From Octopus sinensis (taxonomy: Eukaryota), in NCBI RefSeq assembly GCF_006345805.1, contig NC_043021.1, positions 26,784,001 through 26,848,000 on the forward strand: DNA of 64,000 nt, written 5' to 3'. Positions within the stretch are counted from its first letter, which is position 1; each line of letters opens with the position of its first letter. Both the position numbers and the translations under genes were made by a program. The notes below the pieces were generated by a model, which was given only the letters and a program-made list of their open reading frames with translations, was not told where the DNA came from and searched no databases. This document shows positions 2 through 63,139 of this stretch, one piece after another.

Positions 2-618
2 AGTCAATGTACGTTACTAGCCCAGAAAGAATATAAGAGACGTCATGACAACATAGAAAGAATTGTCCCTTGGACACATTGCAACAAGTATGGACTTGAC
101 AGAGCAAAAAAGTGGTACGAATATAAACTCGAAGGCATTAGTGAAAATGGTAATGCAAAGATCCTATGGGATTTTATGATTCAGTGTGACCATGAAATAG
201 AGAATAGGAAGCCAGACATAGTGTTAATTGAGAAAGAAAGCAAACGATGCTGGAGCATAGATATAGCATGTCCAGCTGACAACAAGGTGTGTGATAAGGA
301 AAAAAGAAAAGTCGATAGATACGACAGGTTAGCTTGGGAGGTTAAGCAGTTGTGGTCACTGAAAGAAGTGGTAGTAGCACCAATAATTGTCGGAGCCCTG
401 GGAACAGTGAGTAAAAATCTTGAGAAGTACATGGAACAAATAGGGGCTGCAATAAGTGTGGAGAACATGCAGAAAACAGCACTGCTTGGAACCGCTCGAA
501 TACTCCGGATGGTGCTTGAAAAATAAGGGGTGCTACCTTAGTTCACTGGGAGTGAACAGCTGGCACCATAGTACTTCTCCAGCGTTAGAAACTGTGCAAA
601 GACAATAAATAATAATAA
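2..618 (+). mobile_element. 3' end of an R4/Dong-clade non-LTR retrotransposon (end of zinc knuckle, restriction-like endonuclease domain, 3' UTR, (TAA)n tail)
   Basis: Frame open 2-526: ..CTLLAQKEYKRRHD..KILWDFMIQCDHEIENRKPDIVLIEK..IDIACPAD..PIIVGALG..LLGTARILR; the RHD and PD..D motifs are typical of RLE-type LINEs; ends in aataataataac at ~604-618. Confidence 0.9.
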
Positions 619-4595: not shown

Positions 4596-5788
4596 CAGGG
4601 TTGGACAAAATAATGGAAACACCTTAAAATTTCAAACAAATTTATTTTAATATGCGGTAGGGCCGCCTTTGGCAGTAATTACAGCTTGACTTCTACGAGG
4701 TGTGGACTCGTACAAAGTTTAAATCGTTTCCAATATCTTGCTAAAATTGCTGTTTCTTTTCAGTTATCATCAGGAAAAGGCTAAAAGAGTCGCCAGTTCT
4801 TGTAGTGATGATGGTGAAGGATATCGATTCCTTCCTTGTTTTTCTAAAATGCACCATAAATGTTGAATAATATTGAGATCTGGGGACTGTGGTGACCAGA
4901 TAGGATATTCAACTTCACTAGAATGTTCCTCGTGCCATTCAGTAACAACATTAACTGTGTGAATTGGTGCATTATCATCCTGAAAGATTGCACTTCTCTC
5001 CAGAAACAGTTCCGCAACAATAGGATGAATTTGATGAGATAAAATGCTTAAATAGTTTTGACTATTAATTCTGCCATGAAGGGAAACCGTTGGGCCGGCG
5101 GATTTCCAAGATATAGCCCCCTCCCCCCCACCGTATACTCGGCCGGTGGTCGGAAATAAGGTAAAGGATGACTCATCCGAGAAAATAACATTATTCCACT
5201 GCTCTAGGGACCAATTTTGTAGGTTTTTACTCCACTCTAAACACTTTGCAACGTTTGTCTTTGAAAGTAGTGGTTTTCTGATTGCAGCCCTCCAGTAAAA
5301 TCCAGCTTTGTGCAGCCCCCGGCGAACAGTTTAGCTGGAAACTTTGTTCTCGAGGTGATCATTAAGTTCTGCAGAATTTTGGGTGCTTTTCTTTGATGAT
5401 CCTTTCTAACAATTCGCGTAAAAGTCTAACGGTCCCTATCTGAAAGTTTTGGTTTTCTTCGACGAGTTTTGTTTCGACGAGGAGGTTTTTCCCTCTTTCT
5501 CAAAGGCTGTTATTACTTTCGAGACAGTACTTCTTGATACACCAAACATTTTGGCTGTTTTCGTTACGCCAGCGCTTGCGATACAAGCAACAACAATTTT
5601 ACCTCTTTGAAAGTCCAATAGATCTGTCATTTTAATGAATTTCAATTACCTTTTTCTGATGATATCTGAAAAGAAACAGCAATTTTAGCAAAACATTAAG
5701 CAACACTAATAATAAATCAAAAGAGATAAAAATAAACAAGCTTTTGACAGTTTTATAGATAGGTGTTTCCATTATTTTGTCCAACCCC

Positions 5789-8266: not shown

Positions 8267-8332
8267 TTATATGTTGTATGTATGTATGTATGTATGATGT
8301 TATGTAGAGTATAATATATATATAATAATATA

Positions 8333-8550
8333 ACATTCAAAAATATAAGGAATGGCCATAATAGGACATTCGACTCACTAGAAAGAGCAGCCAAACTCAA
8401 ACCGCTGAAATTGAAAGAGAAATAAAAACGGGGTAAGCGTTTTTATTTCTCTTTCAATTTCAGAATTACAACTACTAGCGGTTTGAGTTTGGCTGCTCTT
8501 TTTAGTGAGTCGAATGTCCTATTATGGCCATTCCTTATATTTTTGAATGT
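8333..8550. repeat. Near-perfect palindrome (arms 98 and 113 bp, 7-nt loop) within (TA)n
   Basis: Arm 8333-8430 is the reverse complement of 8438-8550 apart from a ~15-bp indel; loop gggtaag. Confidence 0.92.
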
Positions 8551-8674
8551 ATATTATATAGTCTTTGACTATCATTTCTTTCTCGCTAGACCGCTGGTAG
8601 CGGAGAATTTTTTGTAGAATTTTTTGCTACCCTTATATTTATTAATATTATTATATATATATATATATCTATGT

Positions 8675-8774
8675 NNNNNNNNNNNNNNNNNNNNNNNNNN
8701 NNNNNNNNNNNNNNNNNNNNNNNNNNNNNNNNNNNNNNNNNNNNNNNNNNNNNNNNNNNNNNNNNNNNNNNNNN
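8675..8774. other. Assembly gap (100 N)
   Basis: Run of 100 N. Confidence 1.
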
Positions 8775-8819
8775 CACTCAACACTTATGCATAATTGAGA
8801 TCAAGAAAACTCTATGAGA

Positions 8820-8998
8820 TTTTTTTATTTATTCAGTTTCAGCTCACAAGCTGTGGCCATGCTGGGGCACCACCATTAACAATGTGCTATGCTTACTGCA
8901 CCGAGGTTTCCCAAGCGGTCACCCATCTAAGTACTGACTAGGCTTGACGTTGCTTAACTTCGGTGATGAGACGAGAACCAGTGCTTTCAACGTGGCAT
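8820..8998 (-). mobile_element. Candidate SINE3-like chimera: 5S head + short linker + CR1-LINE-type 3' tail
   Basis: Directly after the 5S part on the same strand: ggtggtgccccagcatggccacagcttgtgagctgaaactgaataaataaaaaa, matching the CR1 3' end at 33693-33733. Confidence 0.65.
8889..8998 (-). pseudogene. 5S rRNA-derived sequence, missing roughly the first 10 nt
   Basis: Minus strand atgccacgttgaaagcactggttctcgtctcatcaccgaagttaagcaacgtcaagcctagtcagtacttagatgggtgaccgcttgggaaacctcggtgcagtaagcat matches metazoan 5S rRNA including the A-box and C-box regions; single copy, no T-run terminator. Confidence 0.9.
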
Positions 8999-9072
8999 TT
9001 TTCAAAACCCAGCTATTACTATAAGTGAACTAGTTAAAACCAGGTTCTGCAATCAGTCAGCCTGACGCTTAC

Positions 9073-10796: not shown

Positions 10797-11534
10797 AAAT
10801 TCAAATTAAATCCTGAAAAAACAACAAAACAAGGGATCTAAAGACACACCCTAATAAGATTAAATACTCGGAAAAAGAAAAAGGAAAATCATATTGAAAT
10901 TCTTGAAATATGTGTAAAAAATTTCACATATTTCACGTAATTTATTTTTATTTATTTAATTTTCAAATATTTATGGAAACCAAGCAAATAAACTAAAAGA
11001 AAAAATAAACCTGCAAAACATCCCCAAAAGTTAAAAGATAAGAAAGAAGGAAAATTATTACGTTGAGTAAGGAGTGAGATGAAGGATATTTCTTTAGATT
11101 AAAAAGAAACTGAATGATATAAATATATTAGATAATAGATAATACATACGTGTATATAAACACACATCTTTATTTTTTATCTTTTACTTGTTTCAGTCAT
11201 TAGACTGCGGCCATATTGGGGCACACCTTGGATTTCTTTTAGTTGAAAGAATTGATCCCAGTACTTATTTTTTAAACCAGGTATTTATTCTGTCAGTCTC
11301 TTTTGCTGAACCACTATATTACAGGGATGTAAACACACCAACACTGGTTGTCAAGCAGTGAGTGGCGTGTCAAACACACACACACACATAATGGACTTCT
11401 TTCAGTTTCTGCTGACCAAATCCATTCAGAAGGCTTTGGTTGACCTGACACTTGCTCAAGATGTCACGCAGTGGAACTGAACCTAGAATCATCTGGTTGG
11501 GAAGCAAGCTTCTTACCACACAGCTACGCCTGCA

Positions 11535-13315: not shown

Positions 13316-14984
13316 TATAGAAATTTTTTAACTTAGCATTTTTTTCTTCTGCCTTTAATTGCTTAGTCAAAGAGCAAGACCAACATTCACTCAAATATTT
13401 CCCCAGTAAGGTGGGTAGAATAAAGGCAAAATGTTACTTTCAGACAGAGACTTAACCTGAATATTCAGAACCAAGTGGATTCAGGACTGCCCGAAAGACA
13501 TCCAAGTGCTGAGTAGAGACATTAAGGTGAGCATCACATTACAATTCCTCTCCATCACCACTACCAAATTTTTAAAAAGGCACAACAGGTAGACAGTGTT
13601 TAAGGAGGTTGCTTTGTGACTACATGGTTTGGGGTTCAATCCCATTGCATGGCACCTTGAGCAAGTGAGTTTGACTGAAGAGTGAATCTAATAGATGGAA
13701 AGTGTGTGGAAGTTCAATTGTGTGTATGTATATGTGTATGTGTGTACGTACATGTGTATGTATGTATGTATGTATGTATGTATGTATGAACGTGTGTTAT
13801 TGTGTCTGTCTGTTCACACCAACAGCTTCACAACTAATGCTGGTTTGTTTGTGTTACCAAAACTTAGCAGTTTGGCAAAGACGACTAATAGAATAAGCAT
13901 CAGGCTTAAAAAAAAAAGGAAGTCATAAGGTCAATTTATTTGACTGAAACCCTTGAAGACAGTGCCCCAGCATGGCCACAGTCCAGTGACTGAAACAAGT
14001 AAAAATACATAAGAGAAGATATTGGTTTTAAATTTTGGTACAAGGCCAGCAATTTCAGGAGAGGGTGCAAGTCAATTACATCAACCCCAGCGCTCAACTG
14101 GTACTTATTTTAATGACCTTGAAAGGATGAAAGGCAAAGTTAGCCTCAGTGGAAATTGAACTCAGAATGAAATGCCACTAAGTATTTTGCCTAGTGTGGT
14201 AACTATTCTGCCAGCTTGCCACCTTACAATAAGAGAAAATATTAAAATATATTTTTTCTTTTAATAATTTCAATCAATTTATTGTGATTGTCCATAGACA
14301 ATGTCATGTAAAGCTGAGTCGAACCCAATTGCATATCTGCCACTAGGGCACATGAATCATTTTTAACTACTATTACCCAGTATCTTTTGGTCTTAGGTTT
14401 TCTTTATAACCCAGGCCCCAACCAGTCTGATATAGATTTAATTGGTAATCGTAGTGTCATCCATCCCTTTTCCAGGATAGGGATGCTACTGGTCTGTTGG
14501 CTATCAGGAATTTTGTCATCCACTTTGAGAAGTTTTCTGTTTTACAAAATTTCTGAGTGCCCATAAGGTGGTGAGCTGGCAGAATCATTAGCATACGGGA
14601 CACAATGCTTAACTACATTTCTTCTGGCTCTTATATTTTGAGTTCAAATTCTACCAAGGACAACTCTACCGTTCATCCTCTTTGAAAGAATGACCTTTCT
14701 CCTTGGCATCATCCTCATCATCATTTTAATATCCACTTCTCCATGCTTGCATGGGTCAGAGGAAGTTTATGAAGACAACTTTTCTATGTCTGGATGCTTT
14801 TCCTATTGCTAACCCTCACCTGTTTTGAAGCAAGGTTTTATTTTACCATGGCCAAATATATTCTGGCAGAATATGAGAAATAAATGATACCGCTAATATG
14901 ACAGTGATACTCATTTACAACTATCATGTGACATCAAGACAAGGATACCACACACACACATATGTTAATTGTGAAGGATGATGC

Positions 14985-20717: not shown

Positions 20718-20940
20718 TCATCATCATCGTTTAACGTCCGTTTTCCATGCTAGCATGGGTTGGATGGTTTGACTGGGGTCTAGGAAGGTAGGAGGCTGCA
20801 CCAGGCCCCACTCTGATCTGGCAGTGTTTCTACAGCTGGATGCCCTTCCTAACACCAAACACTCCATGAGTGTAGTGGGTACTTTTTACATGCCACCGGC
20901 ACAGGTGCCAGGGGAGGCTGGCAACGGCCACGATCGGTTG
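20718..20940 (-). mobile_element. RTE LINE 3' UTR fragment with (GAT)n tail
   Basis: Reverse complement of ..ccaacCCATGCTAGCATGGaaaacggacgttaaacgatgatgatg; same 3' end as 38010-38893; similar copies at 25167-25482(-) and 28615-29105(+). Confidence 0.85.
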
Positions 20941-24736: not shown

Positions 24737-26554
24737 AACAATAATTGACTGCAAAGAGTAGCAGAGGCTTCTATAGAAAGGTGAAAATGTTACTGGGTGT
24801 AATAACAATAAGAAAAGAGAGAAAAAGCTAAAACAAGATCCACTATACTAGGCCTAGCAATAGTGTTCTACAACACTAACCATTAGGATTATGGCAATAC
24901 ATTTGACCTACAGTTTCATGAAAGAGCAAAATATCACTGATGAAGTTTCTTATATTTAGAAAACGAAAAAAACATTTTCCTTACTGTGACAAATTCAGAT
25001 TTCATTATGGGTGGCAACCAAGAACAAGAAAAGCCAACCCCTGTAAGTCTGTTAATCAATTCATCACTCCAAAATGATAAGTTATTTACATAAATTTTTA
25101 TGGGTAAACATAAATATAAATGAATACCTATATATGCCTGAGGATGCACATGCACACACACACACAATATCATCATCATCGTTTAGCGTCCGCTTTACAT
25201 GCGGGCGTGGGTTGGATGGTGCAACTGGGGTCTGGGAAGCCAGAAGGCTGCACCAGGCCCTGTCTGATCTGGCAGTGTTTCTACAGCTGGATGCCCTTCC
25301 TAACGCCAACCACTCCGTGAGTGTAGTGGGTACTTTTTACGTGCCACCTGCACAGGTGCCAGACAAGGCTGGCAAATGGCCACGATTGGATGGTGCTTTT
25401 TTACGTGCCATGGGCACGGGGGCCAGACAAGGCTGGCAACGGCCACAATCGGATGGTGCTTTTTACGTGCCACCGGCACGGACACACACACACATATATT
25501 CCCTCTATACATGTATGTGGTTTCCTTCCCAAATCAACAGCATAGATCATTTGCTTACAAGGCAGTTATGAATTAGGCTAGCACCAGGGCAGATACTCTA
25601 ATTTGTATATTTGTGCTTTTGAAGGTTCATCATTAATTGAACGATATTTATTTATGTATAACACATTGTCAATTAGAAGAACTAAAATAAATTTCTAAAC
25701 TATGATGCTTCACTGTAGGTTAAATAAGAAGGGAAGGAAAATGAGCGGATGGTGTTTCTTGATGGACTGTTTCATGGATTGCTGATCACTCCTCAGAGAA
25801 AATGCACTTGGCTTCAGTACACAACCAACAGCATAGATTGGCTGCTTTAAAAGTAATCATAAATTAATTGAACTTAGGAGGAAATAAAGTCAAGACAATA
25901 TTGGTGAAGATTTGAGTTTAGAAGCAGAGGGCCAAAATTAAATAATGCCATTCTTTGTGGTGTGTAGCAATACAAATAATCTAGAGTGTTCTTCATTGTT
26001 AAAGACAATGGAGTTTCATTAAGGGAGAATTTAGCAGTACATGGACAAGTGGTTTAGATATTACACTCATCATTGTAAGGTAATGGTTTCAATTCCCAAA
26101 CCAAACAGTGCATTGAATTCTTGAGCAAAACCCTTCATGCTGCACCAGTACACTAAGTTGTAAATGCATTCAAGCAGTATCTGGAAAGTTTATCCAGTGA
26201 AGGACTGGTGTCCCATTCAGGGTGGGGAAAAGATATTGTAATCTCAGCCATGAGAATCAGATTAATGTCTGGGCTTTATAAATGCTGGGGCTTATGACAG
26301 AGCTAAGAATGCTAAAAATTCCTGGCAGGTTTATGTGGTCTAGTGGTAAGAGTGTTGGACTCATGATTGTAAATTGTTGGACTCATGATTTCAATTCCTG
26401 AACTAGGCAATGCATTGTGTTCTTGCACAAAACACTTCATTTCACATTGCTCCAGTCCACTCAGCAGACACAAATGAGTAATCCTTGCAACAGATCAGCA
26501 TCCTGTCCAGAGGGTAACAATATATATATATATATAATATATATATATATATAT

Positions 26555-27699
26555 GCAATAGAAACTGGGAAACAAGCCATTATGCGTCCATAGGGCTGAA
26601 GAAGGATGGCTTGTCCTTTATCTCTTTTACTTGTTTCAGTCATTTGACTGTGGCCATGCTGGAGCACCACCTTTAGTTGAGCAAATCGACCCCAGGACTT
26701 ATTCTTTGTAAGCCTAGTACTTATTCTATCAGTGTCTTTTGCCAAACCGCTAAGTTACGGGGATGTAAACACACTAGCATCAGTTGTCAAGCGATGTTGG
26801 GGGGGCATAAACACAGACACAGAAACATATATATACATACATACAACAGGCATCTTTCAGTTTCCGTCTACCAAATCCACTCACAAGGCTTTGGTCAGCC
26901 TGAGGCTATAGTAGAAGACACTTGCCCAAGGTGCCACGCAGTAGGACTAAACCCGGAACCATGTGATTGTTAAGCAAGCTACATACCACACAGCCACTCC
27001 TACGCCTATTATATGTATGTGTATATATATATATGTGTATATATATTTTATATATACATATATATATGTATATATATATATACGTATATATATGTATATA
27101 TATATATATATAATATATATATATAATATATATATATATATTGATATTGATATATATATATATAATGATATTGATATATATATGTATATATATATATATA
27201 ATGATATTGATATATATATATAATATATATATATATATATGCAATAGAAACTGGGAAACAAGCCATTATGCGTCCATAGGGCTGAAGAAGGATGGCTTGT
27301 CCTTTATCTCTTTTACTTGTTTCAGTCATTTGACTGTGGCCATGCTGGAGCACCACCTTTAGTTGAGCAAATCGACCCCAGGACTTATTCTTTGTAAGCC
27401 TAGTACTTATTCTATCAGTGTCTTTTGCCAAACCGCTAAGTTACGGGGATGTAAACACACTAGCATCAGTTGTCAAGCGATGTTGGGGGGGGATAAACAC
27501 AGACACAGAAACATATATATACATACATACAACAGGCATCTTTCAGTTTCCGTCTACCAATCCACTCACAAGGCTTTGGTCAGCCTGAGGCTATAGTAGA
27601 AGACACTTGCCCAAGGTGCCACGCAGTAGGACTAAACCCGGAACCATGTGATTGTTAAGCAAGCTACATACCACACAGCCACTCCTACGCCTATTATAT

Positions 27700-27710
<11 letters not shown>
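26555..27710. repeat. Tandem duplication, period ~686 bp, each unit containing a SINE-A copy and (TA)n
   Basis: gcaatagaaactgggaaacaagcc.. starts at 26555 and 27241; unique parts nearly identical. Confidence 0.9.
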
Positions 27711-29445
<1,735 letters not shown>

Positions 29446-32135: not shown

Positions 32136-33758
32136 ATCCTCCTAAAAGCATGTAAGAGAGTCCTAGCAAGACCACTGCAGTTCCTCTTTCAGAGCTTCCT
32201 TGCAGCTGGCAAACTTCCAGGAAAACTGAAGGAAGGTAAAATATGCCCCATTCATAAAGGAGGTAGCAGAGCGGAAGCCAGAACTATAGACCTATCTCTC
32301 TGACCTCACACATCAGCAAGGTCATGGAACGAATAGTCAGAAGGAAGCTGATCACCTTCCTTGAAGAGAATGACTTGCTGCCCGACACCCAACATGGTTT
32401 CCGACCAGGGAGAAGCTGTTTAACTCAGCTCCTACAACACCATGACTGGGTGCTGAAACGGCTGCTCAACCACTCAAATGTGGAAGTGATATATCTCGAC
32501 TTTGCAAAGGCCTTTGATAAAGTCGATCATGGAATGATATGTCACAAACTGCGTGATCTCAACATAGTTGGAAAACTGGAGAATGGCTTCATGACTTTCT
32601 GAAGGATAAGTCAGGTGGTAGTAGCCAATGGGGCCACCTCCATTAACACACAAATAGTGAGCGGTGTTCCGCAGGGCACTGTTCTGGGACCACTACTGTT
32701 CATAATGGCCCTCTCAGACATGCCCTCAGCCACGCAGAGAGCCACGATCACAAGTTATGCAGATGATACAAAAGTTTCACAGGCAATACAGAACCCTGAG
32801 GACACTAAACACCTGCAATGTGAGCTGGACCGAAATATACAAGTGGGCTGAAAAGAATAGCATGCAGTTCAATGCTGGAAAGTTTCAAGCTTTATACTAT
32901 CAGCATGCAAAACTGAATGCAATACCCAATGAATACACTGGACCTGGAGGGATTGCAATCCCAGAGGCACAATCAGTGCATGACCTGGGTATTCACATGA
33001 GTGATGACGCGACCTTTCATGTACATGTTGCTAAACTGACAATGAAATGTAGACGGCTGGCTGGATGGATTCTTAGAACCTTTAGAACAAGAGAACAAGA
33101 AACCATGATGGTCCTCTGGAAGACACTTGTCCTAAGCCACTTTGACTATTGCTCTCAGCTATGGTCACCATCCAGTGTCAAGTTGATCACAGAACTTGAG
33201 GCGATCCAACGAAGCTACACAAAGAAGATAGCCTCTATGCAGAATGTAAGCTACTGGGAAAGACTCAAGAGATTAAAATTATATTCCCTGGAGCGTAGGC
33301 GGGAAGATATGCCATAATATACATCTGGAAGATCCTGGAGGGAAGTGTCCTGAACTTTGGCATCGAGAGTTACGCAAATGCCAGAACTGGGCGCCACTGC
33401 GTGGTGCCTAGGACTCCAAACCTGCCATCAAGATGTAGGACAAGATTCTGTGATAGCCTGGGTTTCCGAGGCCCACAGCTCTTCAATATCCTCCCAAAGA
33501 ACCTGAGAGACCTGCATGGGGTGGATACAGATGTCTTTAAAATGAAGCTGGATCCTTTCCTGTCAGGTGTCCCAGATGAACCACTTCACGGCAGGAGGGG
33601 CAGATGAGGGCAGCTGCATCGAACTCTCTCATGCACCAAATAGCAGTTGCTAGAAACCCTCCATGAAGTGAAACCAAGTAGCAACACCAAATGGCGGTGC
33701 CCCAGCATGGCCACAGCTCATAAGCTGAAACTAGAATCAATCAATCAATCCATCAATC
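32136..33758 (+). mobile_element. 5'-truncated CR1-clade LINE (RT domain to 3' tail), frameshifted
   Basis: KGGSR..YRPISLTSHISKVMERIV, QHGFRPGRSCLTQL, YLDFAKAFDKVDH, SGVPQGTVLGPLLF, SYADDTKV, LSHFDYCSQLWSP, LKLYSLERRR; 3' UTR ends ggcggtgccccagcatggccacagctcataagctgaaac followed by (AATC)n. Confidence 0.95.
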
Positions 33759-33759
33759 A

Positions 33760-33864
33760 TCATATATATATGTATATATATATATGTATATATAATATAT
33801 ATATGTATAATATATATATATATATAGTATATATATATATATTATATATATATATACATATATG

Positions 33865-36245: not shown

Positions 36246-36624
36246 TATAGATATATATGTATATATATATATCTGTGTGTGTGTGTGTGCATGTGTGTGT
36301 ATAAACATATATCTTTATATATATATACATACACACACACATATACACACACATTTGTGTTGTATCTATTGTGTATAGATTACATATGAATATATATGTA
36401 TATATACATGCATAATAGGATAAAAAGTATATATGCTATCTACTTATGATAAAATATAAGCTCAAACATATATATTCACATAGATATATACACACACACA
36501 TATATATTTATGCATAAATATATTTATATATATATTGTTGCATATAAAACCTGAAATACAATAAACATAAATAAATGTAGATAAAACAAAATAAACTGAA
36601 ATAGTAATAAGCCAAAATGTCCAC

Positions 36625-36908: not shown

Positions 36909-38009
36909 CATATATACATGTGTATACATATATATATGCCATTATATTGCGCAGCCAGAGCAGCAGCATACAGCAAAAGCAAAGAACAAAAATTGATGAA
37001 GGTAAATGGTGAAGAGGTGAATTCTGCTAATCATGAGTCAACCAAAAGTTTCACGAGAGTTGCCAAATAACAAGAATTTATTCAATACAAAGCTAAAAAT
37101 AATTATAAATGATACATATAAACTTAAAAAGTTAATCTGTAATTAGAAATTTTAAGATCTTTATAATGAATAAGAAAAAAAAGAAAAAACATATATTTTA
37201 TAAATTGCCTTCTTTGATCTTTGATTTAATATCCAGACTTCTAATATAGATATAATTATCTCCCTTACAATAACTGGCCACCAGGTTGCACCACATGTTT
37301 AAGATATTTAAACCATTTTTCTAAAAAACATAATATAAATATAATGTAACTTTTGTTTAAAAATAAGACAAAAAGAAAAACACATTTCATGAATGTCTTG
37401 CAAATTGTAATTATTTTCCATCTATAAGAAATATCTTGCTTTGTAAAATGTTTAATGTAGTTTAACTTATTTAACTTGAGCTATATCACACTGATGATTT
37501 GAAATAAGAATGAAATGGTGCTATACATAATTATCTATAATTAGAAATTTCAAGATCTTTGTAATGAGTTAGAAAATGGCTAAATATGCATATTTGATAC
37601 ATCTTCATTGGTTTTTGATTAAAAATTAAAATTTCTTGTGCTAAAATTTTGTACAGTGAAACTTTTGTTAAAATAAAACTTTAACTAAAGAAAATTTTTT
37701 TCCAAAACATGATTTATGGTGAAACAAGACTTTTGCAAAAATAATAAAAGTTTTAAAATATTTCTTTTATTCTTTCATTTATTTCAGTCATTTGACTGTG
37801 GTCATGCTGGAGCACCGCCTTTAGTCGAGTAAATCAATCCCAGGACTTATTCTTTGTAAGCCTAATACTTATTCTATCGGACTCTCTTGCTGAACCGCTT
37901 AGTGATGGGGACGCAAACACACCAGCATCGGTTGTTAAGCAATGTTGGGGGACAAACACAGACACACATGCAGACACACACACACACACACACATATATA
38001 AATAAATAA

Positions 38010-38893
38010 AAGGCAGATTGTATGACGCATGTGTACAAACAGCCATGCTACATGGCAGTGAAACATGGGCCGTGACTGCTGAGGATATGCGTAAGCTCGC
38101 AAGAAATGAAGCCAGTATGCTCCGATGGATGTGTAATGTCAGTGTTCATACTTGACAGAGTGTAAGTACCTTGAGAGAAAAGTTGGACCTAAGAAGCATC
38201 AGTTGTGGTGTGCAAGAGAGACGTTTGCGCTGGTATGGTCATGTGACGAGAATGGATGAAGATAGTTGTGTGAAAAAGTGCCACTTCCTAGCGGTTGAGG
38301 GAACCTGTGGAAGAGGTAGACCCAGGAAAACCTGGGACGAGGTGGTGAAGCACGACCTTCGAACTTTAGGTCTCACCGAGGAAATAACTAGAGACCGAGA
38401 CCTATGGAAGTATGCTGGGCGTGAGAAGACCCGGCAGGACAAATGAGACCATAACCCATGGCCTCTACCTGGGATGTAGCCAGTCCACTTATGCATGCCT
38501 TTCCTTCTTGGGACACAAAACTCCACTTGTGAAGACCTGTTGAGGCAAGTGGAAATCAGAACCAAAATCGAAATCGATCAACATTAATGGAAATTGTAGC
38601 TGTGATACCAGTGCCGGTGGCATGTAAGAGAACCATCCGAACATGGCCGTTGCCAGCGCCGCCCTGACTGGCCTCCATGCCGATGGCACGTAAAAAGCAC
38701 CATCTGATCATGGCCGTTTGCCAGCTCTGTCTGGCACCTGTGCCGGTGGCATGTAAAAAGCACCCACTACACTCACGGAGTAGAAACACTGCCAGATCAG
38801 ACTGGGCCTGGTGCAGCCTTCTGGCTTCCCAGACCTCAGTTGAACCGTCCAACCCATGCTAGCATGGAAAGCAGACATTAAACGATGATGATA
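38010..38893 (+). mobile_element. RTE-clade LINE 3' fragment (ORF end, 3' UTR, (GAT)n), nested inside a SINE-A copy
   Basis: GRLYDACVQTAMLHGSETWA..RRLRWYGHVTRM..GRGRPRKTWDEVVKHDL..RDRDLWK; SINE-A tail half at ~37780-37995 and head half at ~38945-39110 flank it. Confidence 0.92.
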
Positions 38894-45815: not shown

Positions 45816-46688
45816 CTATGCAAGGAAAGATGAAGCAAAAACAAAACCAAAAATTGCAAAATTTAAGTGGAAACAACAGCAGCAATAATAATAACAGTGA
45901 GAGAAGTGTGACCCTATCAGGGAGGCTCTACAAGGGCCATGGACAAGCTGTAACCCACAGGGCTTTCTAAATGGCACACCTAACACAAAATTAACTTTTT
46001 GGTGGAGCAACCCACCTGATGATAAGTCATATTTCACGTCGCCCAATACTTGGGAAAGTCTGTCCATGCCTACTCTCTATGTTTGCCTGACCAGCTGGAA
46101 ATAGCAGCCAACTCTTCCTCAAACATAGGAAAAAAGAACAACAGTTACAAGCAGAATGATCATAAGTCTGCTCAGTCAATGCAGGCTTGTCACAATGGTA
46201 AAGATGTTTCTTTTGCAGCCATGATGTCCAAAGTTCAGTCCCAAATGCACAGCATCATGAGCAAATGTTTTACCATTGCATCACTGTGTTGCTACTTAGC
46301 CCCAGATGAGTTTTGATCCAGTAAACCAATGATTAAGCGCCTTCCATTTGTGACCATTCCATCTAATTTTTTGTTTCAAGCAATTGTGTAAATGGATTTG
46401 GTAGATGGAAACTGAAAGAAGCCTGTTATATACATACATATGCGTAGGTGTGTGTGTGCATTCCTCACACCACTTGACAACCGGTGTTGGTGTGCTTAAC
46501 TTAGTGGTTTGACAAAAGAGACTGATAGAATAGGTACCAGGCTTAAATAAGTACTGGAGTTGATTCATTTGAATAAAGTTCTTCAAGATGGTGCCCCAGC
46601 ATGGCCACAGTCTAATGACTGAAACAAGTAAGAGATAAAAGATAAAAGATGATAGAATAATATAAAAACAGAAAAGAAAGGTTCTTAC

Positions 46689-46980
46689 CCTTTTAAAGGG
46701 ACTCCCATAACAGGCATCACGATAATGGCGAGCATGGCTTTCCAGTGGAGGCCCACCAATTTCTCCAAGGGGCAACAACCGTGGTGAACCTGTCTGGTTT
46801 GGTACCTTGTATTCGCGCTCTGAATTGTGAACTTGTGATCTTTGAACCGTGAAGACTCGATGTATGTCATCAAAGCCCCGTGCCATGACGCCAGTTTTAG
46901 TGTGGGCCAGATCAAATGTGTGGCCCAGCTCATGTAAAGATGAACCGAGGCCTGTAGAATAGTTGGCCCAGTAATATTCG
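46689..46980 (-). CDS. Coding exon (292 nt, phase 2 to 0) with HExxH zinc-binding motif; YIL108W-like / Pfam Metallopep-type metallopeptidase
   Basis: Acceptor tctacttccag|C, donor AGG|GTAAGA; EYYWANYSTGLGSSLHELGHTFDLAHTKTGVMARGFDDIHRVFTV..YGSPFKR; HExxHxxxxxH followed by a GVM Met-turn-like motif; family call is from motif recall, not a search. Confidence 0.88.
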
Positions 46981-47079
46981 CTGGAAGTAGATTATTATTA
47001 TTATTATTAGTTGGAATAATAGTAGTAGTTTAGAAGATGTCACACAATATCAATTGTTATATTATAATGTGAAGATATT

Positions 47080-49252: not shown

Positions 49253-51011
49253 CTAAAGAGATCAGTGACAAAGAGGGGGGGGGGAGAAAAACAGAAAACA
49301 GCTACAACATGTTCACTAGCTTTGTCTCAATCGCATAAATCATAACCACCATCAATCAAACTTCCCCACCAATCTTCCCCGTTCAGCATGTCTCCTAGGT
49401 AACAAAATGTCTCAACACCTTTCACCTTTGAATTATTTCCAAGATCCAACATTCCAACATTCTCTCCATATTCACCTCCCCCCATACACACCTTATCTTT
49501 TATCTTCTATCAGTTTCAGCCATTGGACTGTGGCCATGCTGGAGCACTGCCTTGAAGAACTTCTAGTCAGAAGAATTGACCCCAGCACTTATTCTTTTAC
49601 TTGTTTCAGTCATTTGACTGTGGCCATGCTGGAGCACCACCTTAAGGGGTTTTAGCTGAACAAATAGATCCCAGGACTTATTCTTTGTAAACCTAGTACT
49701 TATTCTATTGGTCTCTGCTACGGGGACATAAACACACCAACATCGATAGCCAAGCAATGATGGGAGAGACAAACACAAATATATATATATATTTACATAT
49801 TTACACACACACACACACACACACATGACAAGCTTCTTTCAGTTTCCCTCTATTATCAAATCCACTCATAAGGCTTTGGCCAGTTGAGGCTATAGTAGAA
49901 GACACTTGCCCAAGCCCCACAATGGGACTGAACCTAGAACCATGTAGTTGGGAAGCAAATTTCTTACCACACAGCTACATCAGAACCTATTTTATATATT
50001 TAAAAAAAATCTGGTCCTTATTCTATCAGTCTCTTTTTGCTGAACCACTAAGTTACAGGGACATATACAAACCAACACCAGTTATCAAGTGGTGGTGGTG
50101 GAGGACAAATGCAGACACACACATGACAGGCTTTGTTTAGTTTCTGTCTAAAAACTCCACTCACAGCTCAAGGCTGTAGTAGAAGACACTTGCCCAAGGT
50201 GCCACACAGTGGGACTGAACCCGGAACCATGTGGCTGGGAAGCAAGCCTCTTACTACGCAGCCTATACATGTAAATGTGGTTGTTATATCAATTGATATT
50301 GTCTTCTACCACTACCTGTTTCAGTGAAGTCGCCCAGAGCATGTACATATAAAAGACTTCACTTTTCGACAGCCTTCTTGCACACTGTACACAGTCACTT
50401 CCTTTCTACTTCCCACCTAATCTTGGGTTTTAATTTTGCCTTTGTCTTGCTCATATTTACTGCTTCCGTAAGACCGTGAGCTGGCAGAATCGTTAGCATA
50501 CCAGGAATAATGCTTAGCAGTCTTTTGTCCATCCTGATGTGCTGACTTGGCCTTTCAACCTTTTGGGGTCAATAAAATAAGTACCAATTGAACACTGCAG
50601 TTGATGTACTCAATTTGCCCCCTCTTCCAAAATTGCTGGCTTTGTGCCAAAATTTGAAATCAGTATTTACTGTCTTCTTCAATCCAACCATATACACTCT
50701 CTGCTACTAACATGATACTTTATGTGTGTGTGTATGTGTATACATGAATGCATGCATACATACATACATACCTACATATATACATATATATAGTAGAAAG
50801 GATTATTATTATTATTCTTATTAAGGTAGTGAGCAGGAAGAATTGTTAGCACACCAGCTGAAATTCTTAGTGGCATTTTGTCCGTCTTTACATTCTGCGT
50901 TCATATATACACACACACTTATATATATGTGTAAGATGGAATCTCCTATTGAAAATGATGCATGAGTGTTTAGCTTTTGCTGAACGAACTACAAAAATGA
51001 TTTGTTTATAG

Positions 51012-51522: not shown

Positions 51523-51738
51523 GTTTATAGTGATCAAATTTGCTGTACGTTAGCTCACTCCCTTCAAATCAACATTGCCTGTACAGATACACAAATGTGT
51601 CACTCATCAGATGTGGAAATCATTGCAGAGCAATGTGAAATGAGGTGCCTGGTCCAGCAATTGAACTATGATCTAGTAATCAGGACTGTAATACCTTAAC
51701 TACTAGGCCATATATATGTGTGTGTGTGTGTGCCTATA

Positions 51739-51796
<58 letters not shown>

Positions 51797-54700
51797 TTAT
51801 ATGTGAGTATGTGTATCTACATCCACATATATATACATACATATATACATACACATGTATGTACACATGTATATGTATATACTCACACATACATATACAT
51901 ATAGATACATACATACACAGAGACACAGATGCACACACTCATTTACATACATGCACACATACACATATATTTGAATATGTCTGTTGTTTATATTTCATAA
52001 TCAACCCAAACCATGCTGCCATTGACTAGCCCACACAAACACCAACAAATCCATTCTTCTGCATATTACTCACAGTAATAGCACATACAATGATTAGTAG
52101 ATTGGCAGAAGTGGTAGAGCAACACACAAAATGCCTTGTGTTAAATCAACCACGGCTCTCTTTATGTGTCTGATTTCAAATCATACAATGACAATTCTAA
52201 CTTTCATCTTTTTCCTTTCCAATTGATGGTAGTTAAGCCTTATACTATGGAAATTAGATATATCTCCTCAAAATTTCATTACTTTAAACTGCAAAAAACA
52301 GTTTTATACATCAATTTATCTTTTGTAGAAGAATGTCAATGTTTGAAACGGGTTTCTTTTGAGATATATCAAGTGTATTGAAGCAAGGTGACTTGTAGAA
52401 AATAGCAATTCTATTTATTCATTTCAAATGTTGGCACAAGGCCAGCAATTTCAGGGTGCAGTCAATTACAGCGACCCCCATTGCTCAGCTGGTACCTATT
52501 TTATCAACCGCAAAAGGATGAAAAAGACAGTCACTTGACAGAATTTGAATCCAGAAAGTAAACACAGATCAAATGTTGCTAAGCATTTCACCCTGCATGC
52601 TAATGATTCTGCCAGCTCACCACCTTCATTCATTTTATTTATTGGTAGATATTTAGTATCATTACTGGAGTAACAATGAAGTTTAATTTCACAGTGAAAG
52701 GGATAAGATTCATTAATTACAATATGAAGAGAATAAGGAACGTCATCAATATTATAATCTATTTCATTGGTGTAAACATCACCATTGTTGCTATCATTGG
52801 TTAACCCTTTTATGGTGGAAATTCCATTTCCCTTAGCTGTGGAAATTCTATTACTCTTAACTGCAGCAGACAGTTTTAACTACCAATCTATTTTTTGTTG
52901 TGGAAGGTCATATTTGAATCTGTTTTTTCTTTGAGATATGTCAAGTTTATTGAGACAGAAGATATTGATCCTATTTTTTTTTTTTGATAGATATTTAATA
53001 TAATTACAGGAATAACCATGAAATTTAATTTTGCAGTTAAAGTGTTAATAAAGAAAGTACCAGTGAAATACTGATGTTGATTTTAATTGATGGTACCCCT
53101 CTCTCCATCCTTCGATTTGTGTCTCTCTTAGAAATCAATATTAGAACACACAAAGATGGTGAGCTGATTGGATTGTTAACATGCCGGGCAAAATGCTTAG
53201 TGGCATTTCATGTCTTTATGTTCTGAGTTCAAATTCCATCGAGGTTGACTTTACCTTTCAACCATTCAAGGTTGATTAAATAAGTACCAGTTGAAAGTTA
53301 GGGTTGAAGTAATTGACTTCCCCACTCACCTGAAATTACTGGTCTTGTGCCAAAATTTGAAACCAATATTAGAACACAAAAGCAGCATGCTGGAAGAAAT
53401 GTTGGCAAATCAGACCAAAAATACTAAGCGAAATTTCTTACAGCTTTGTTATGTTCAGGATTCAAATCCTACCGTGGCTATCTTTCATTCTTGTAGGTTT
53501 GATAAAATAATGTACCAGTCAAGTACTGGGGTCAATGTAATCGACATTCTCCCTCTCTTCAAAACTGCTGATTTGGATGCCAAAATATGAAGCACTACAA
53601 CAAACACATTGCACACATAACACCACTACACACACACATAACACACAAATACAGCAAGAACAATACTATCAACAACAATAACTACACAAACGACAACAAC
53701 AACATCAGTAGCAAATGAACAATAAAAGCAGCGATGGCGATGGGGATAGAAGTTAAAATAAAGTAAAATATTTTTTCTGTTTTTCTTCACCTCAGATAAG
53801 TGAATGGTGGTGGTGGTGGTGGTGGTAGTGATTACGGATATGATGATGATAATGATGATGATGATGACGGGAGGTGATGAGAAGTACAAAAAAAAAACAG
53901 AACCTACGAAGAATGTTTGGAAGCTGATGTAACATGGCAAACAGCAAATTATGCAACTTTTTTTGTGATGAGGTGGTGGAGACGGTGGTGGAGAGTAACA
54001 ATCCTGATCTCCCTCCCCTCCTCAACTCCACCAATCACCAGGCAACAACCCCCTCCTCTGCACCCATTCTAGCACTACACACTCCTCCCACTACCACTAC
54101 CACCAACTAATGCATGCCCTACCCCCACACCTCCTTCACTATCTCCCCTCACTACCACAAATAACAACACCACCACCACCACCGCCAACAACACCTTAGC
54201 TACAAACGCTACCACAACCACTGTTGGTATCATTACTGTCACCACCACCACCACCACCACCACCGCCGCCATCTCAACCCCCACCACTAACACTATTGCC
54301 ACCATCACCAGTATCAGCATCACCACCAGTACCACTGCAATAACTAACATCATAAACACCACCACCATCACCATCACCACCCACAATCTGCATGTGATAC
54401 CCAGAAGAGCTGGCAGGTAGTGGTGCTAGGGAGTCTTTCAATGTTACTCATTCACCAAGTTCATTCTTTAATCAAACACACACACACACACGCACGCACA
54501 CACATACACACACACTTATTTATATATACTCATATATACCCACACTCCTATCTCTCCAGACAAATAGATTTATAATAACACACACACACACATGCACACA
54601 CACACACAGAGGCACACACACACACACAATCACACATTCTTTGTACATGCATTCACACATTCCTTGCATATACATTCCTAACATACACACATGTCTGTCA

Positions 54701-62022: not shown

Positions 62023-63139
62023 AGCTACCCATTTGGTAGTGGTGGTTGTTGTCTTTGTTGCATTGCTTGAACTGTTGGCAGCATTTGGTGAGATGGTGAC
62101 AGTTGTTGTTGTTGGTAGTGGTGTTAATGGAAGTGGTAATGTTGGCAGTGGTGGTGGTCACAGTTGGCAGTGGTGCCAAAGTTTCAGTCATACCTCTTCG
62201 CCTTTGTCAGTTAAGTTCAAGTAACAATGATGATCCACAGAGACAGCAGTTACAGTGGGGTGGTGTAGGTGGTTGTGGTGATGGCTATAAGCAGCGGCAG
62301 AGGTGGGAGTGGTAGTGATGGTAGCATTGGTAATGGTGGTGCTGGCGGCTGTGGTGACAACAGCAATGGTGGTGATAGCAGTGGTGGTGGCGGTGGTAGT
62401 GGTGGCGGTAGAGGTGGTGGTAGTGATGGTGGTGGTAGCAGTTGTGGTGGCAATGGTGACAGTGGCAGGAGTGGTGGTGGAAGTGATGGTAGTGACAGTG
62501 CCAATGGTAGTGGTGGTGATGGGGTCAGGAGCAGTGGTATAGGTACTCCTAGCAACAGTGCTGATGGTAGTGGTGATGAAATGCTGGTGGTGGTGGCCTC
62601 AGTTTCAGCCATGCCTCCTTTCCTTTTGTCAATTAACTTAACAATGATGATCTTAGAAAAGGAATAGGAAGAAACCTTTGCTTTGTGTACAGCACCGAAC
62701 CAATCCCTGATCCCTTTTTAGCAAAGGCAGCAGTTAAAACATTTCCTTTTATCAAGACCTTAAAAGGTTCCATGCAAAAGAACGCAACCCATATTAAAAC
62801 ATTGTGTCATTACTTCCTTTTAAGTCCCCACATTCATTTACCACAACTACTACCACCACTGTTACTGTTGCCACTGCCACCACTGCTGTCAATACCACTA
62901 CCAGAACCATCACCTTATCACTGCCACCACTACCACCACCTCTATCAGCACTACCAACTGCCACTATCCCCCATCACCACTGTAGCTGCCGCCACCACCA
63001 TCGCCACCACATCACCACCATGAGTGACACTGCCAACACCACACTGCAATGACTGACACCACCACCACTACCACCACTACCACTACTGGTGCCGCCATCA
63101 CCACAACAACCCTGCTGCTGCCGCCATGATCCCTTGCCA

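What the first reader, a model, noticed from the sequence alone, without database searches (positions are those of the whole stretch)
8820..8998. 5S rRNA head fused to a CR1-LINE 3' tail: candidate SINE3-type retroposon
Seen: ~110 nt of 5S rRNA (A- and C-box regions retained, first ~10 nt missing), a ~14-nt linker, then GGTGGTGCCCCAGCATGGCCACAGCTTGTGAGCTGAAACT and an A-rich end, matching the tail of the CR1 LINE at 33693-33733. Known: zebrafish SINE3 has this architecture (5S Pol III head, CR1-like tail). Inference: a 5S-derived SINE family, or a one-off template-switch chimera, mobilised by this CR1. I do not know whether it is already catalogued for this lineage.
Basis: partly seen in the sequence, partly recalled or inferred. 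Interest (0 to 1): 0.8.

Follow-up and report, generated by a model that had tools for sequence, protein, structure and literature searches.

The report
5S-headed SINE with LINE tail
A roughly 180-base element made of a 5S ribosomal RNA copy fused to the 3' end of a LINE family from the same window is really there, but it is a familiar kind of genomic parasite (a 5S-type SINE) and probably an ordinary, slightly truncated copy of a family that octopus repeat catalogues already list.

Summary
On the MINUS strand, window 8998-8889 is a 5S rRNA copy (Rfam RF00001, 63.8 bits, E=4e-11). It covers 5S positions 11-120 without gaps and keeps boxes A, IE and C. An 11-nt linker (8888-8878) follows, then a 55-nt tail (8877-8823) that is 87% identical to the very 3' end of the RT-encoding LINE fragment at 32267-33745. 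The tail includes two hairpins and a terminal 4-mer repeat. Two compensatory base pairs show that the tail is of the LINE type, not copied from the abundant SINE in the window, which uses the same tail module. The 5S part ends at the RNA's natural 3' terminus with no T-run terminator, which points to an RNA-level fusion. It is not a mis-join at the N gap, which lies more than 100 nt from the junction. Copy number, the property that separates a SINE family from a one-off template-switch chimera, could not be tested because no accessible collection holds the host genome. The window's repeats look octopod (from memory). Two published octopus annotations list multi-copy "SINE/5S" families, so I favour a family copy (0.6). 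5S-headed SINEs have arisen many times, so this is at most a new member of a known kind.

The parts
8889..8998 (-). 5S rRNA-derived head (5S positions 11 to about 120; the first ~10 nt are absent)
   Evidence: Rfam RF00001 63.8 bits, E=4.3e-11. Gap-free 75-81% identity to metazoan 5S sequences over 98-108 nt.
8945..8959 (-). Box A of the internal Pol III type-1 promoter (AGTTAAGCAACGTCA)
   Evidence: Maps to 5S positions 50-64 in the gap-free alignment. 11/15 match human and 12/15 match Drosophila 5S. The box positions come from established knowledge of Xenopus 5S genes.
8937..8942 (-). Intermediate element (CCTAGT)
   Evidence: 5S positions 67-72; 5/6 match CCTGGT.
8912..8929 (-). Box C (TAGATGGGTGACCGCTTG)
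   Evidence: 5S positions 80-97; 15/18 match human and 17/18 match Drosophila 5S.
8878..8888 (-). 11-nt linker AGCACATTGTT of uncertain origin
   Evidence: Lies between the 5S 3' terminus and the start of significant LINE homology. It only weakly resembles the LINE's TAGCAACACCAA.
8854..8875 (-). Tail hairpin 1 (UGGUGGUGCCCCAGCAUGGCCA)
   Evidence: Same fold predicted in the element, the LINE and the SINE tail. 85% of cells pair across 9 tails.
8840..8853 (-). Tail hairpin 2 (CAGCU-UGUG-AGCUG)
   Evidence: 100% of cells pair across 9 tails. Two pairs are changed on both sides, and these separate {element, LINE} from the 7 SINE tails.
8823..8839 (-). 3'-terminal A-rich, 4-mer-periodic end (AAACTGAATAAATAAAA), matching the LINE's AAACTAGAATCAATCAATC
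   Evidence: Alignments. Homology to the LINE runs to the LINE's own terminal (AATC)n repeat.
8997..9002 (-). Candidate 5' target-site duplication AAAAAT (weak)
   Evidence: The only direct repeat of 6 nt or more between the two flanks. It sits in A-rich context and could be chance.
8819..8824 (-). Candidate 3' target-site duplication AAAAAT (weak)
8806..8809 (-). First TTTT downstream on the sense strand, a possible Pol III terminator for this copy
   Evidence: T-run scan. There is no T4 run inside the element.
32267..33745 (+). 5'-truncated, frameshifted LINE fragment (RT, C-terminal region, 3' UTR), a representative of the presumed partner family
   Evidence: RVT_1 at 32267-32848. The ORFs sit in three frames. 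225 database relatives with E<=1e-3, many carrying PF00078.
33690..33744 (+). LINE 3' tail: two hairpins plus (AATC)n, the source type of the element's tail
   Evidence: 87% over 55 nt to the element. Fold z=-2.97. No 5S similarity in the LINE 3' UTR.

Best explanation
This is a slightly 5'-truncated, decayed genomic copy of a 5S rRNA-derived SINE (SINE3-type, a 'simple' SINE with head, 11-nt linker and tail but no body). The family arose when the reverse transcriptase of a CR1-like LINE, having copied the last ~55-65 nt of its own RNA, switched template to the 3' end of a 5S rRNA. How it works: the internal type-1 promoter in the head (box A, IE, box C) recruits TFIIIA, TFIIIC and TFIIIB, so Pol III transcribes a master copy. 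Because the 5S terminator T-run is missing, transcription reads through into the tail and stops at the first T-run in the flank. The two tail hairpins and the terminal short repeat mimic the LINE's 3' end, so the LINE's RT recognises the RNA in trans and inserts it by target-primed reverse transcription. Insertion often truncates the 5' end, as in this copy. SHOWN: the three-part anatomy, the intact promoter boxes, the absence of any internal T4 run, the shared and covarying tail hairpins, and a tail of the LINE type. INFERRED: Pol III transcription, recognition by the LINE RT, template-switch origin, and multi-copy status.
For: 5S head with promoter boxes. The head ends at the natural 3' terminus of 5S RNA (position ~120) and no T-run follows, as expected for an RNA-level fusion and as required for read-through. 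The tail is 87% identical to the LINE's extreme 3' end, including its terminal repeat. The same two-hairpin fold appears in element, LINE and SINE tails. 91% of cells pair against 16-45% in slid controls, and two compensatory pairs group the element with the LINE. An abundant SINE in the window uses the same tail module at least 8 times, so this tail demonstrably supports trans-mobilisation in this genome. Hairpin plus terminal microsatellite is the documented CR1 recognition module, and new SINE heads are documented to arise by template switching (PMC5729268). 5S-headed SINEs arose independently many times (PMC10886601, PMC5786205). Octopus annotations list SINE/5S: 4 families covering 9.83 Mb of the 2.8-Gb O. 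vulgaris assembly, about 0.35%, which predicts ~225 bp per 64 kb, roughly the one copy seen (PMC13282606). They also give 0.03-0.04% of repeat copies in O. bimaculoides and O. vulgaris (PMC8967140). Family copies should therefore far outnumber one-off chimeras.
Against: Only one copy was seen, and no second copy turned up in any accessible collection, although those collections evidently lack the host genome. There is no body region and no diagnostic substitution that would separate SINE-derived copies from a fresh 5S fusion. The TSD is weak (6 nt, A-rich). The host attribution to an octopod rests on my memory of its repeats, and string searches of the literature found nothing. The published 'SINE/5S' classes are automated labels. 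At least one looks like arrays (7 'recent' insertions covering 42 kb), and their consensus sequences could not be compared with this element.
Confidence: 0.6

Rival explanations
1. One-off chimeric retropseudogene. During a single LINE retrotransposition event the RT switched from the LINE RNA, after copying its last ~55-65 nt, to a 5S rRNA molecule and integrated the chimera. It never amplified, so it is a proto-SINE that went nowhere.
For: The anatomy is the same as for the best explanation. The 5S part ends at its RNA 3' terminus and the tail is of the LINE type, closer to the LINE (87%) than to any SINE tail (77-84%). Only one copy is seen. Small-RNA/LINE chimeras made by template switching are an established class (Buzdin et al. 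2003, as cited in PMC4758252).
Against: Such chimeras are rare per genome, whereas published octopus annotations report about 10^3 or more SINE/5S copies. The 11-nt linker is not colinear with this LINE copy, which fits a diverged family consensus or a different LINE subfamily as well as untemplated bases.
Confidence: 0.26
2. Two independent events. A solitary 5S pseudogene or orphan 5S gene relic had a heavily 5'-truncated LINE 3' fragment (~70 nt) inserted by chance a few bases past its end.
For: A 5-nt direct repeat CATAG flanks the linker+tail block (sense strand, at the 5S end and again just after the A-rich end; read). Removing the block would leave a TTTT run 8 nt after the 5S end, loosely like a terminator. 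Very short 5'-truncated LINE copies are common for CR1-type LINEs.
Against: It needs an insertion within about 15 nt of the 5S 3' end and in the same orientation. That is roughly 2-3 in 1000 even counting all ~10 tail-bearing insertions in the window (my estimate), multiplied by the rarity of solitary 5S pseudogenes. A 5-mer repeat in two ~15-nt windows is expected by chance about 10% of the time. A 5'-truncated 5S pseudogene with no poly(A) itself needs a retroposition mechanism.
Confidence: 0.08
3. Assembly artefact: a chimeric contig or mis-join near the N gap joined a 5S sequence to a repeat tail.
For: A 100-N scaffold gap lies at 8675-8774, and the region is repeat-rich.
Against: The junction is more than 100 nt from the gap, inside continuous sequence. 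Both halves are in the same orientation, and the join falls exactly at the 5S 3' terminus and at the start of the LINE tail module, a biologically meaningful breakpoint that a random mis-join would not produce.
Confidence: 0.03

Closest known systems
SINE3 of zebrafish (Kapitonov & Jurka 2003), the founding 5S rRNA-derived SINE class
   Same: 5S-derived head carrying the type-1 Pol III internal promoter, and a LINE-related 3' end that lacks poly(A). SINE3 as a class is defined by the 5S head (PMC5786205, PMC10886601).
   Different: The host is almost certainly a different phylum, and SINE3 families are reported to be born independently, so this is not the same family. This element has no body (about 180 nt in total). 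No sequence comparison was possible.
TguSINE1 / PittSINE of passerine birds (CR1-mobilised SINEs; PMC5729268)
   Same: Head, then directly a CR1-type tail with an RT-binding hairpin and a terminal microsatellite. Two elements with different heads share one tail type, and template switching is the proposed origin.
   Different: The bird heads are tRNA-derived, and PittSINE took its tail from the older SINE. Here the head is 5S, and the diagnostic (compensatory) tail positions match the LINE, not the co-resident SINE.
Lepidopteran HaSE3 and related SINE3 families, coelacanth CoeSINE5, python SINE-1_Pmo
   Same: 5S head joined to LINE-derived 3' sequence. HaSE3 shares its 3' part with a tRNA-headed SINE of the same genome (HaSE1), as this element shares its tail module with the window's abundant SINE.
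   Different: Those tails derive from RTE-clade LINEs and often include RTE 5'-UTR pieces as a body. Here the tail comes from a LINE with a CR1-style 3' end, and there is no body.
'SINE/5S' families in published octopus repeat annotations (PMC13282606; PMC8967140)
   Same: The class label fits (SINE with 5S head), the host lineage is probably the same, and the density is compatible with one copy per ~64 kb under the 2026 estimate.
   Different: Those are automated classifications without a described structure, tail or LINE partner. Some entries may be 5S arrays.
Small-RNA/LINE chimeric retrogenes (U6-L1, 5S-L1; Buzdin et al. 2003)
   Same: A small Pol III RNA copied up to its 3' terminus, fused to the 3' end of a LINE through RT template switching.
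   Different: Those are L1-driven, poly(A)-ended, single-copy and have clear TSDs. Here the LINE has a stringent-type structured tail, the TSD is doubtful, and single-copy status is unknown.

Membership tests
SINE (formal SINEBase definition, PMC3531059) | Short (<1 kb), interspersed, non-tandem repeat | tested here: met
   About 176-190 nt and solitary, with no tandem 5S units or second 5S in the 64 kb.
SINE (formal SINEBase definition, PMC3531059) | [quoted passage not shown] | not testable with these tools
   There is one copy in the window. The host genome is absent from every searchable collection. Literature figures for octopus SINE/5S are indirect.
SINE (formal SINEBase definition, PMC3531059) | At least 60% identity with 5S rRNA over at least 60 nt | tested here: met
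Rfam covariance model 63.8 bits against a gathering score of 38.
SINE (formal SINEBase definition, PMC3531059) | Not a plain RNA pseudogene: extra non-RNA-gene sequence, or diagnostic changes shared with a SINE source gene | tested here: inconclusive
   Extra LINE-derived tail is present, but with one copy no diagnostic substitutions can be defined, and a one-off chimera would look the same.
SINE3 (5S rRNA-headed SINEs) | 5S-derived head retaining the type-1 Pol III promoter (box A, IE, box C) | tested here: met
   Boxes at 8959-8945, 8942-8937 and 8929-8912 match at 11-12/15, 5/6 and 15-17/18. Transcription itself was not tested.
SINE3 (5S rRNA-headed SINEs) | Loss of the 5S terminator, so that Pol III reads into the 3' part | tested here: met
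   No T4 run anywhere in 8998-8823. The first TTTT is at 8809-8806.
SINE3 (5S rRNA-headed SINEs) | 3' end shared with a partner LINE of the same genome | tested here: met
   87% over 55 nt to the 3' terminus of the LINE at 33690-33744, with a shared two-hairpin fold and covariation.
SINE3 (5S rRNA-headed SINEs) | Sequence homology to a described SINE3 family (zebrafish SINE3, HaSE3, and so on) | not tested
   No Repbase, Dfam or SINEBase sequences are on hand. An independent origin is expected.
CR1-clade LINE (as the partner) | LINE reverse transcriptase | tested here: met
   PF00078 RVT_1 in two ORF pieces at 32267-32848. 225 relatives with E<=1e-3.
CR1-clade LINE (as the partner) | 3' UTR ending in hairpin(s) plus a short microsatellite instead of poly(A) | tested here: met
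   Two hairpins (z=-2.97) followed by (AATC)n at 33731-33760. The feature is as described for CR1 in PMC5729268.
CR1-clade LINE (as the partner) | Placement of the RT within the CR1 clade, separate from L2, Rex1, Jockey, RTE and the rest | not testable with these tools
   No reference LINE library, and Pfam gives only RVT_1. The C-terminal motif pattern resembles CR1 from memory only.
CR1-clade LINE (as the partner) | N-terminal apurinic-type endonuclease and ORF1 | tested here: inconclusive
   This copy is 5'-truncated at about 32267 by a microsatellite, so the region is simply absent.
Template-switch chimeric retrogene (Buzdin type) | Whole chimera flanked by one target-site duplication | tested here: inconclusive
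   Only AAAAAT (6 nt) at 9002-8997 and 8824-8819, in A-rich context. No empty-site paralogue exists in the window.
Template-switch chimeric retrogene (Buzdin type) | Single-copy (not amplified) | not testable with these tools
   Same limitation as for copy number.

The most novel reading that the evidence does not exclude
This could be a copy of a cephalopod-specific SINE3 family that arose independently of the vertebrate and insect ones by fusing 5S rRNA directly to the minimal two-hairpin recognition module of a CR1-like LINE. It would then be the first structurally characterised 5S SINE of a mollusc, with an identified LINE partner and a natural head-swap pair (5S-headed and tRNA/CORE-type SINEs using sister versions of one tail).
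Probability: 0.45. Interest if true: 0.35.

Novelty: new member of a known kind. Interest (0 to 1): 0.25.

Why it matters
If it is a family, it adds one more independent origin of 5S-headed SINEs, this time in a mollusc. It also gives a compact example of the minimal requirements for trans-mobilisation by a stringent LINE: a Pol III head plus a ~55-nt two-hairpin tail and nothing else. The compensatory differences between this tail and that of the co-resident abundant SINE could serve as a natural experiment on RT-tail specificity in octopus genomes, where SINE expansions dominate genome architecture. It does not change any general concept, because both the SINE3 class and template-switch genesis are well established.

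Tried and rejected
(1) Six-frame pseudo-protein of the junction region searched against the 5.8-billion-protein index: 74 word-sharing candidates, none with E<=10.
(2) Exhaustive HMMER scan of 1.84 billion representatives with the 48-aa junction-spanning ORF (8795-8938): 0 hits.
(3) Composite DNA pattern (box C, gap, tail core) scanned in metagenome, viral and prokaryote-genome collections: 10 hits, all chance matches in GC-rich bacterial coding sequence.
(4) LINE relatives fetched from ENA and Logan (L011-L016): other lineages at 72-77% nt identity or unrelated, with no shared tail and no composite.
(5) Organism identification through a PF12044 peptidase exon: best hit 59% identity, with no species names.
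(6) Literature searches with sequence strings from the window's repeats: nothing.
(7) Apparent 5S-like similarity in the LINE 3' UTR suggested by MAFFT: rejected, since Rfam finds no 5S signal there even at E<=10.
(8) An 18-nt match to the linker at 62325-62342: (GGT)n low complexity, not a second copy.
(9) Empty-site paralogue for the flanks: none in the window.
(10) tRNA origin of the co-resident SINE head: ARAGORN finds none, and Rfam finds no tRNA in the one copy scanned, so I call it only 'tRNA/CORE-type' from the literature and memory.
(11) Cephalopod 5S rRNA reference (PMC326244) and the octopus genome paper (PMC4795812): not held.

Full report
OBSERVATION. The feature is real and lies on the minus strand. 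Rfam's 5S rRNA model matches 9007..8893(-) at 63.8 bits (gathering score 38, E=4.3e-11), and this is the only 5S-like sequence in the 64 kb. 32 of 41 of the most conserved Rfam consensus positions match. The first ~10 nt of 5S are absent; TTTTGAAAA stands in their place. The internal type-1 promoter elements map to 8959-8945 (box A), 8942-8937 (IE) and 8929-8912 (box C) and are largely intact (box positions from established Xenopus 5S work).

After the natural 3' end of 5S (…GCAGTAAGCAT, 8889) come 11 nt of uncertain origin (AGCACATTGTT, 8888-8878). Then 55 nt (8877-8823) are 87% identical to the extreme 3' end of a LINE fragment at 33690-33744 (E=3e-11 within the window). The 22-mer core of this tail is identical in the two, and it occurs nine times in the window with up to 3 mismatches against none expected. 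The scaffold gap (8675-8774) is 45 nt beyond the 3' end and more than 100 nt from the junction.

SURROUNDINGS. The other seven tail matches belong to an abundant SINE ('SINE_A', at least 30 fragments covering 3.3 kb of the window). Its tail is 77-84% identical to the element's tail. The LINE fragment (32267-33745) encodes a reverse transcriptase (RVT_1) in three shifted frames, followed by a ~140-nt 3' UTR that ends in the tail and an (AATC)n repeat. It has no 5S similarity.

Element, LINE and SINE_A tails all fold into the same two adjacent hairpins. Across nine tails, 91% of pair cells are standard pairs against 16-45% when partners are slid. Hairpin 2 is paired in every sequence. Two of its pairs are changed on both sides (C-G/U-A in the element and the LINE; U-A/C-G in the SINE_A tails). 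So the tail is a conserved structured module, and the element's version is the LINE's, not a copy of SINE_A's.

The element has no internal T4 run. The next TTTT on the sense strand is 14 nt past its 3' end. The only candidate target-site duplication around the whole element is AAAAAT, and it is not convincing in this A-rich context. The immediate flanks are unique in the window, so no empty-site paralogue exists.

WHAT IT IS. The 5S part stops at the RNA's own 3' terminus, lacks the gene's T-run terminator, and is followed almost at once by the minimal 3' recognition module of a LINE. This is the signature of an RNA-level fusion: reverse transcriptase starting on a LINE 3' end and switching to 5S RNA. 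It does not look like two DNA segments that happen to be adjacent. This is the accepted route both to one-off small-RNA/LINE chimeras (Buzdin et al., cited in PMC4758252) and to new SINE families (PMC5729268). In that paper, CR1-mobilised bird SINEs show the same plan of head, hairpin and terminal microsatellite.

What separates a SINE from a chimera is amplification. SINEBase requires at least 100 copies and distinguishes SINEs from RNA pseudogenes (PMC3531059).

COPY NUMBER COULD NOT BE TESTED. None of the DNA collections contains animal genomes. A composite pattern scan returned only chance hits in bacterial genes. Two protein-space tricks found nothing: the six-frame junction query and the exhaustive HMMER scan with the junction-spanning ORF. 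The window's own LINE ORF and a genuine-looking peptidase exon also have no near-identical entries. The host genome is therefore simply not represented, and these negatives carry no weight. LINE relatives fetched from ENA and Logan belong to other lineages.

INDIRECT EVIDENCE. The window's repeats look octopod to me: SINE_A with a CORE-like segment, and 'REP_B' with …CATGCTAGCATGGGTTGGACGG…. This is from memory, and I could not verify it.

If the window is octopod, two published annotations are relevant. A curated O. vulgaris annotation lists four SINE/5S families covering 9.83 Mb of a 2.8-Gb assembly (0.35%; PMC13282606), which predicts about 225 bp per 64-kb window, roughly the single copy seen. 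An earlier RepeatModeler-based study lists SINE/5S at 0.030-0.039% of repeat copies in O. bimaculoides and O. vulgaris, on the order of 10^3 copies (PMC8967140).

These are automated labels. One 'recently active' 5S family has 7 insertions covering 42 kb, which looks like arrays. Their consensus sequences (Zenodo) were out of reach. Even so, they make family copies much more numerous a priori than one-off chimeras.

VERDICT ON MECHANISM. Best explanation (0.6): a 5'-truncated, decayed copy of a 5S-headed simple SINE. It would be transcribed by Pol III from the internal 5S promoter, read through into a LINE-mimicking tail, and be inserted in trans by the CR1-like LINE's reverse transcriptase. 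Rivals: a one-off template-switch chimera with the same anatomy that never amplified (0.26); independent insertion of a ~70-nt LINE 3' fragment next to a solitary 5S pseudogene (0.08); and mis-assembly (0.03). The second rival is supported only by a 5-nt CATAG repeat and requires an unlikely coincidence of position and orientation. The anatomy, promoter boxes, missing terminator and tail structure are shown. Transcription, RT recognition, template-switch origin and amplification are inferred.

COMPARISON AND NOVELTY. The architecture is that of SINE3-type elements. These are reported to have been born independently many times (PMC10886601) in fish, coelacanth, python, Lepidoptera and fungi, usually with RTE- or CR1/L2-type tails. 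This one differs in having no body and, probably, in its host phylum. The 'CR1' label for the partner fits its 3'-end style and RT but was not established phylogenetically.

The class SINE/5S is already listed for octopus genomes, though without any structural description. I therefore rate it a new member of a known kind, of modest interest. The one instructive detail is the natural pair of heads (5S versus SINE_A's) on sister versions of one two-hairpin tail, distinguished by compensatory changes.

Noticed in passing
window 26524-27048 and 27210-27733: Two stretches 99.2% identical over 525 bp (period 686 bp), each carrying a SINE_A copy with identical flanks. This looks like a recent local tandem duplication rather than two insertions.
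   Followed up: partly
window 8321-8560: A ~240-bp self-complementary (84%) foldback with a perfect 25-bp inverted repeat around 8407-8465, 115 nt left of the N gap. It is MITE-like or a hairpin-forming repeat, and it caused weak 'Plastid-psbA' Rfam hits.
   Followed up: partly
window 13961-13982, 26647-26668, 27333-27354, 37795-37816, 46590-46611, 49527-49548, 49617-49638, 11176-11224: The abundant SINE_A ends in the same two-hairpin module as the LINE at 33.7 kb, but with compensatory changes in hairpin 2 (CAGT/ACTG against CAGC/GCTG) and a different terminal repeat ((AAAGAT)n-like against (AATC)n). This suggests its partner is a sister LINE subfamily.
   Followed up: partly
window 46689-46991 (-): An exon-like ORF with an HExxH motif matching Pfam PF12044 'Metallopep' (E=4e-18). 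The same open frame continues downstream into antisense SINE_A sequence (46299-46640). The best database relative is only 59% identical.
   Followed up: partly
window 4773-5330 (-): Tc1/mariner transposase relic (DDE_3 and HTH_Tnp_Tc3_2 domains).
   Followed up: partly
window 38156-38443 (+) and 2-523 (+): Two further LINE C-terminal ORF fragments of other families. The first has an RTE-like 'RLRWYGHV…GRPRKTW' motif (from memory). Neither has a Pfam hit.
   Followed up: no
window 28630-29090 (-), 25179-25488 (+), 38582-38870 (-), 20727-20937 (+): A second interspersed repeat family ('REP_B', beginning …GTCCGTTTTCCATGCTAGCATGGGTTGGACGG…) with internal ~63-bp tandem sub-repeats. From memory it is a hallmark octopus repeat, and it is the main basis of my host attribution.
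   Followed up: partly
window-wide, for example 51715-51797, 36268-36355, 1262-1344: More than 200 sub-threshold Rfam matches to mir-297, mir-466, mir-3149 and similar families. All lie in (TA)n/(TG)n microsatellites and are compositional artefacts, not microRNA genes.
   Followed up: yes
window 62320-62440: (GGT)n-like low-complexity tract that produced a spurious 18-nt match to the element's linker and tail start.
   Followed up: yes
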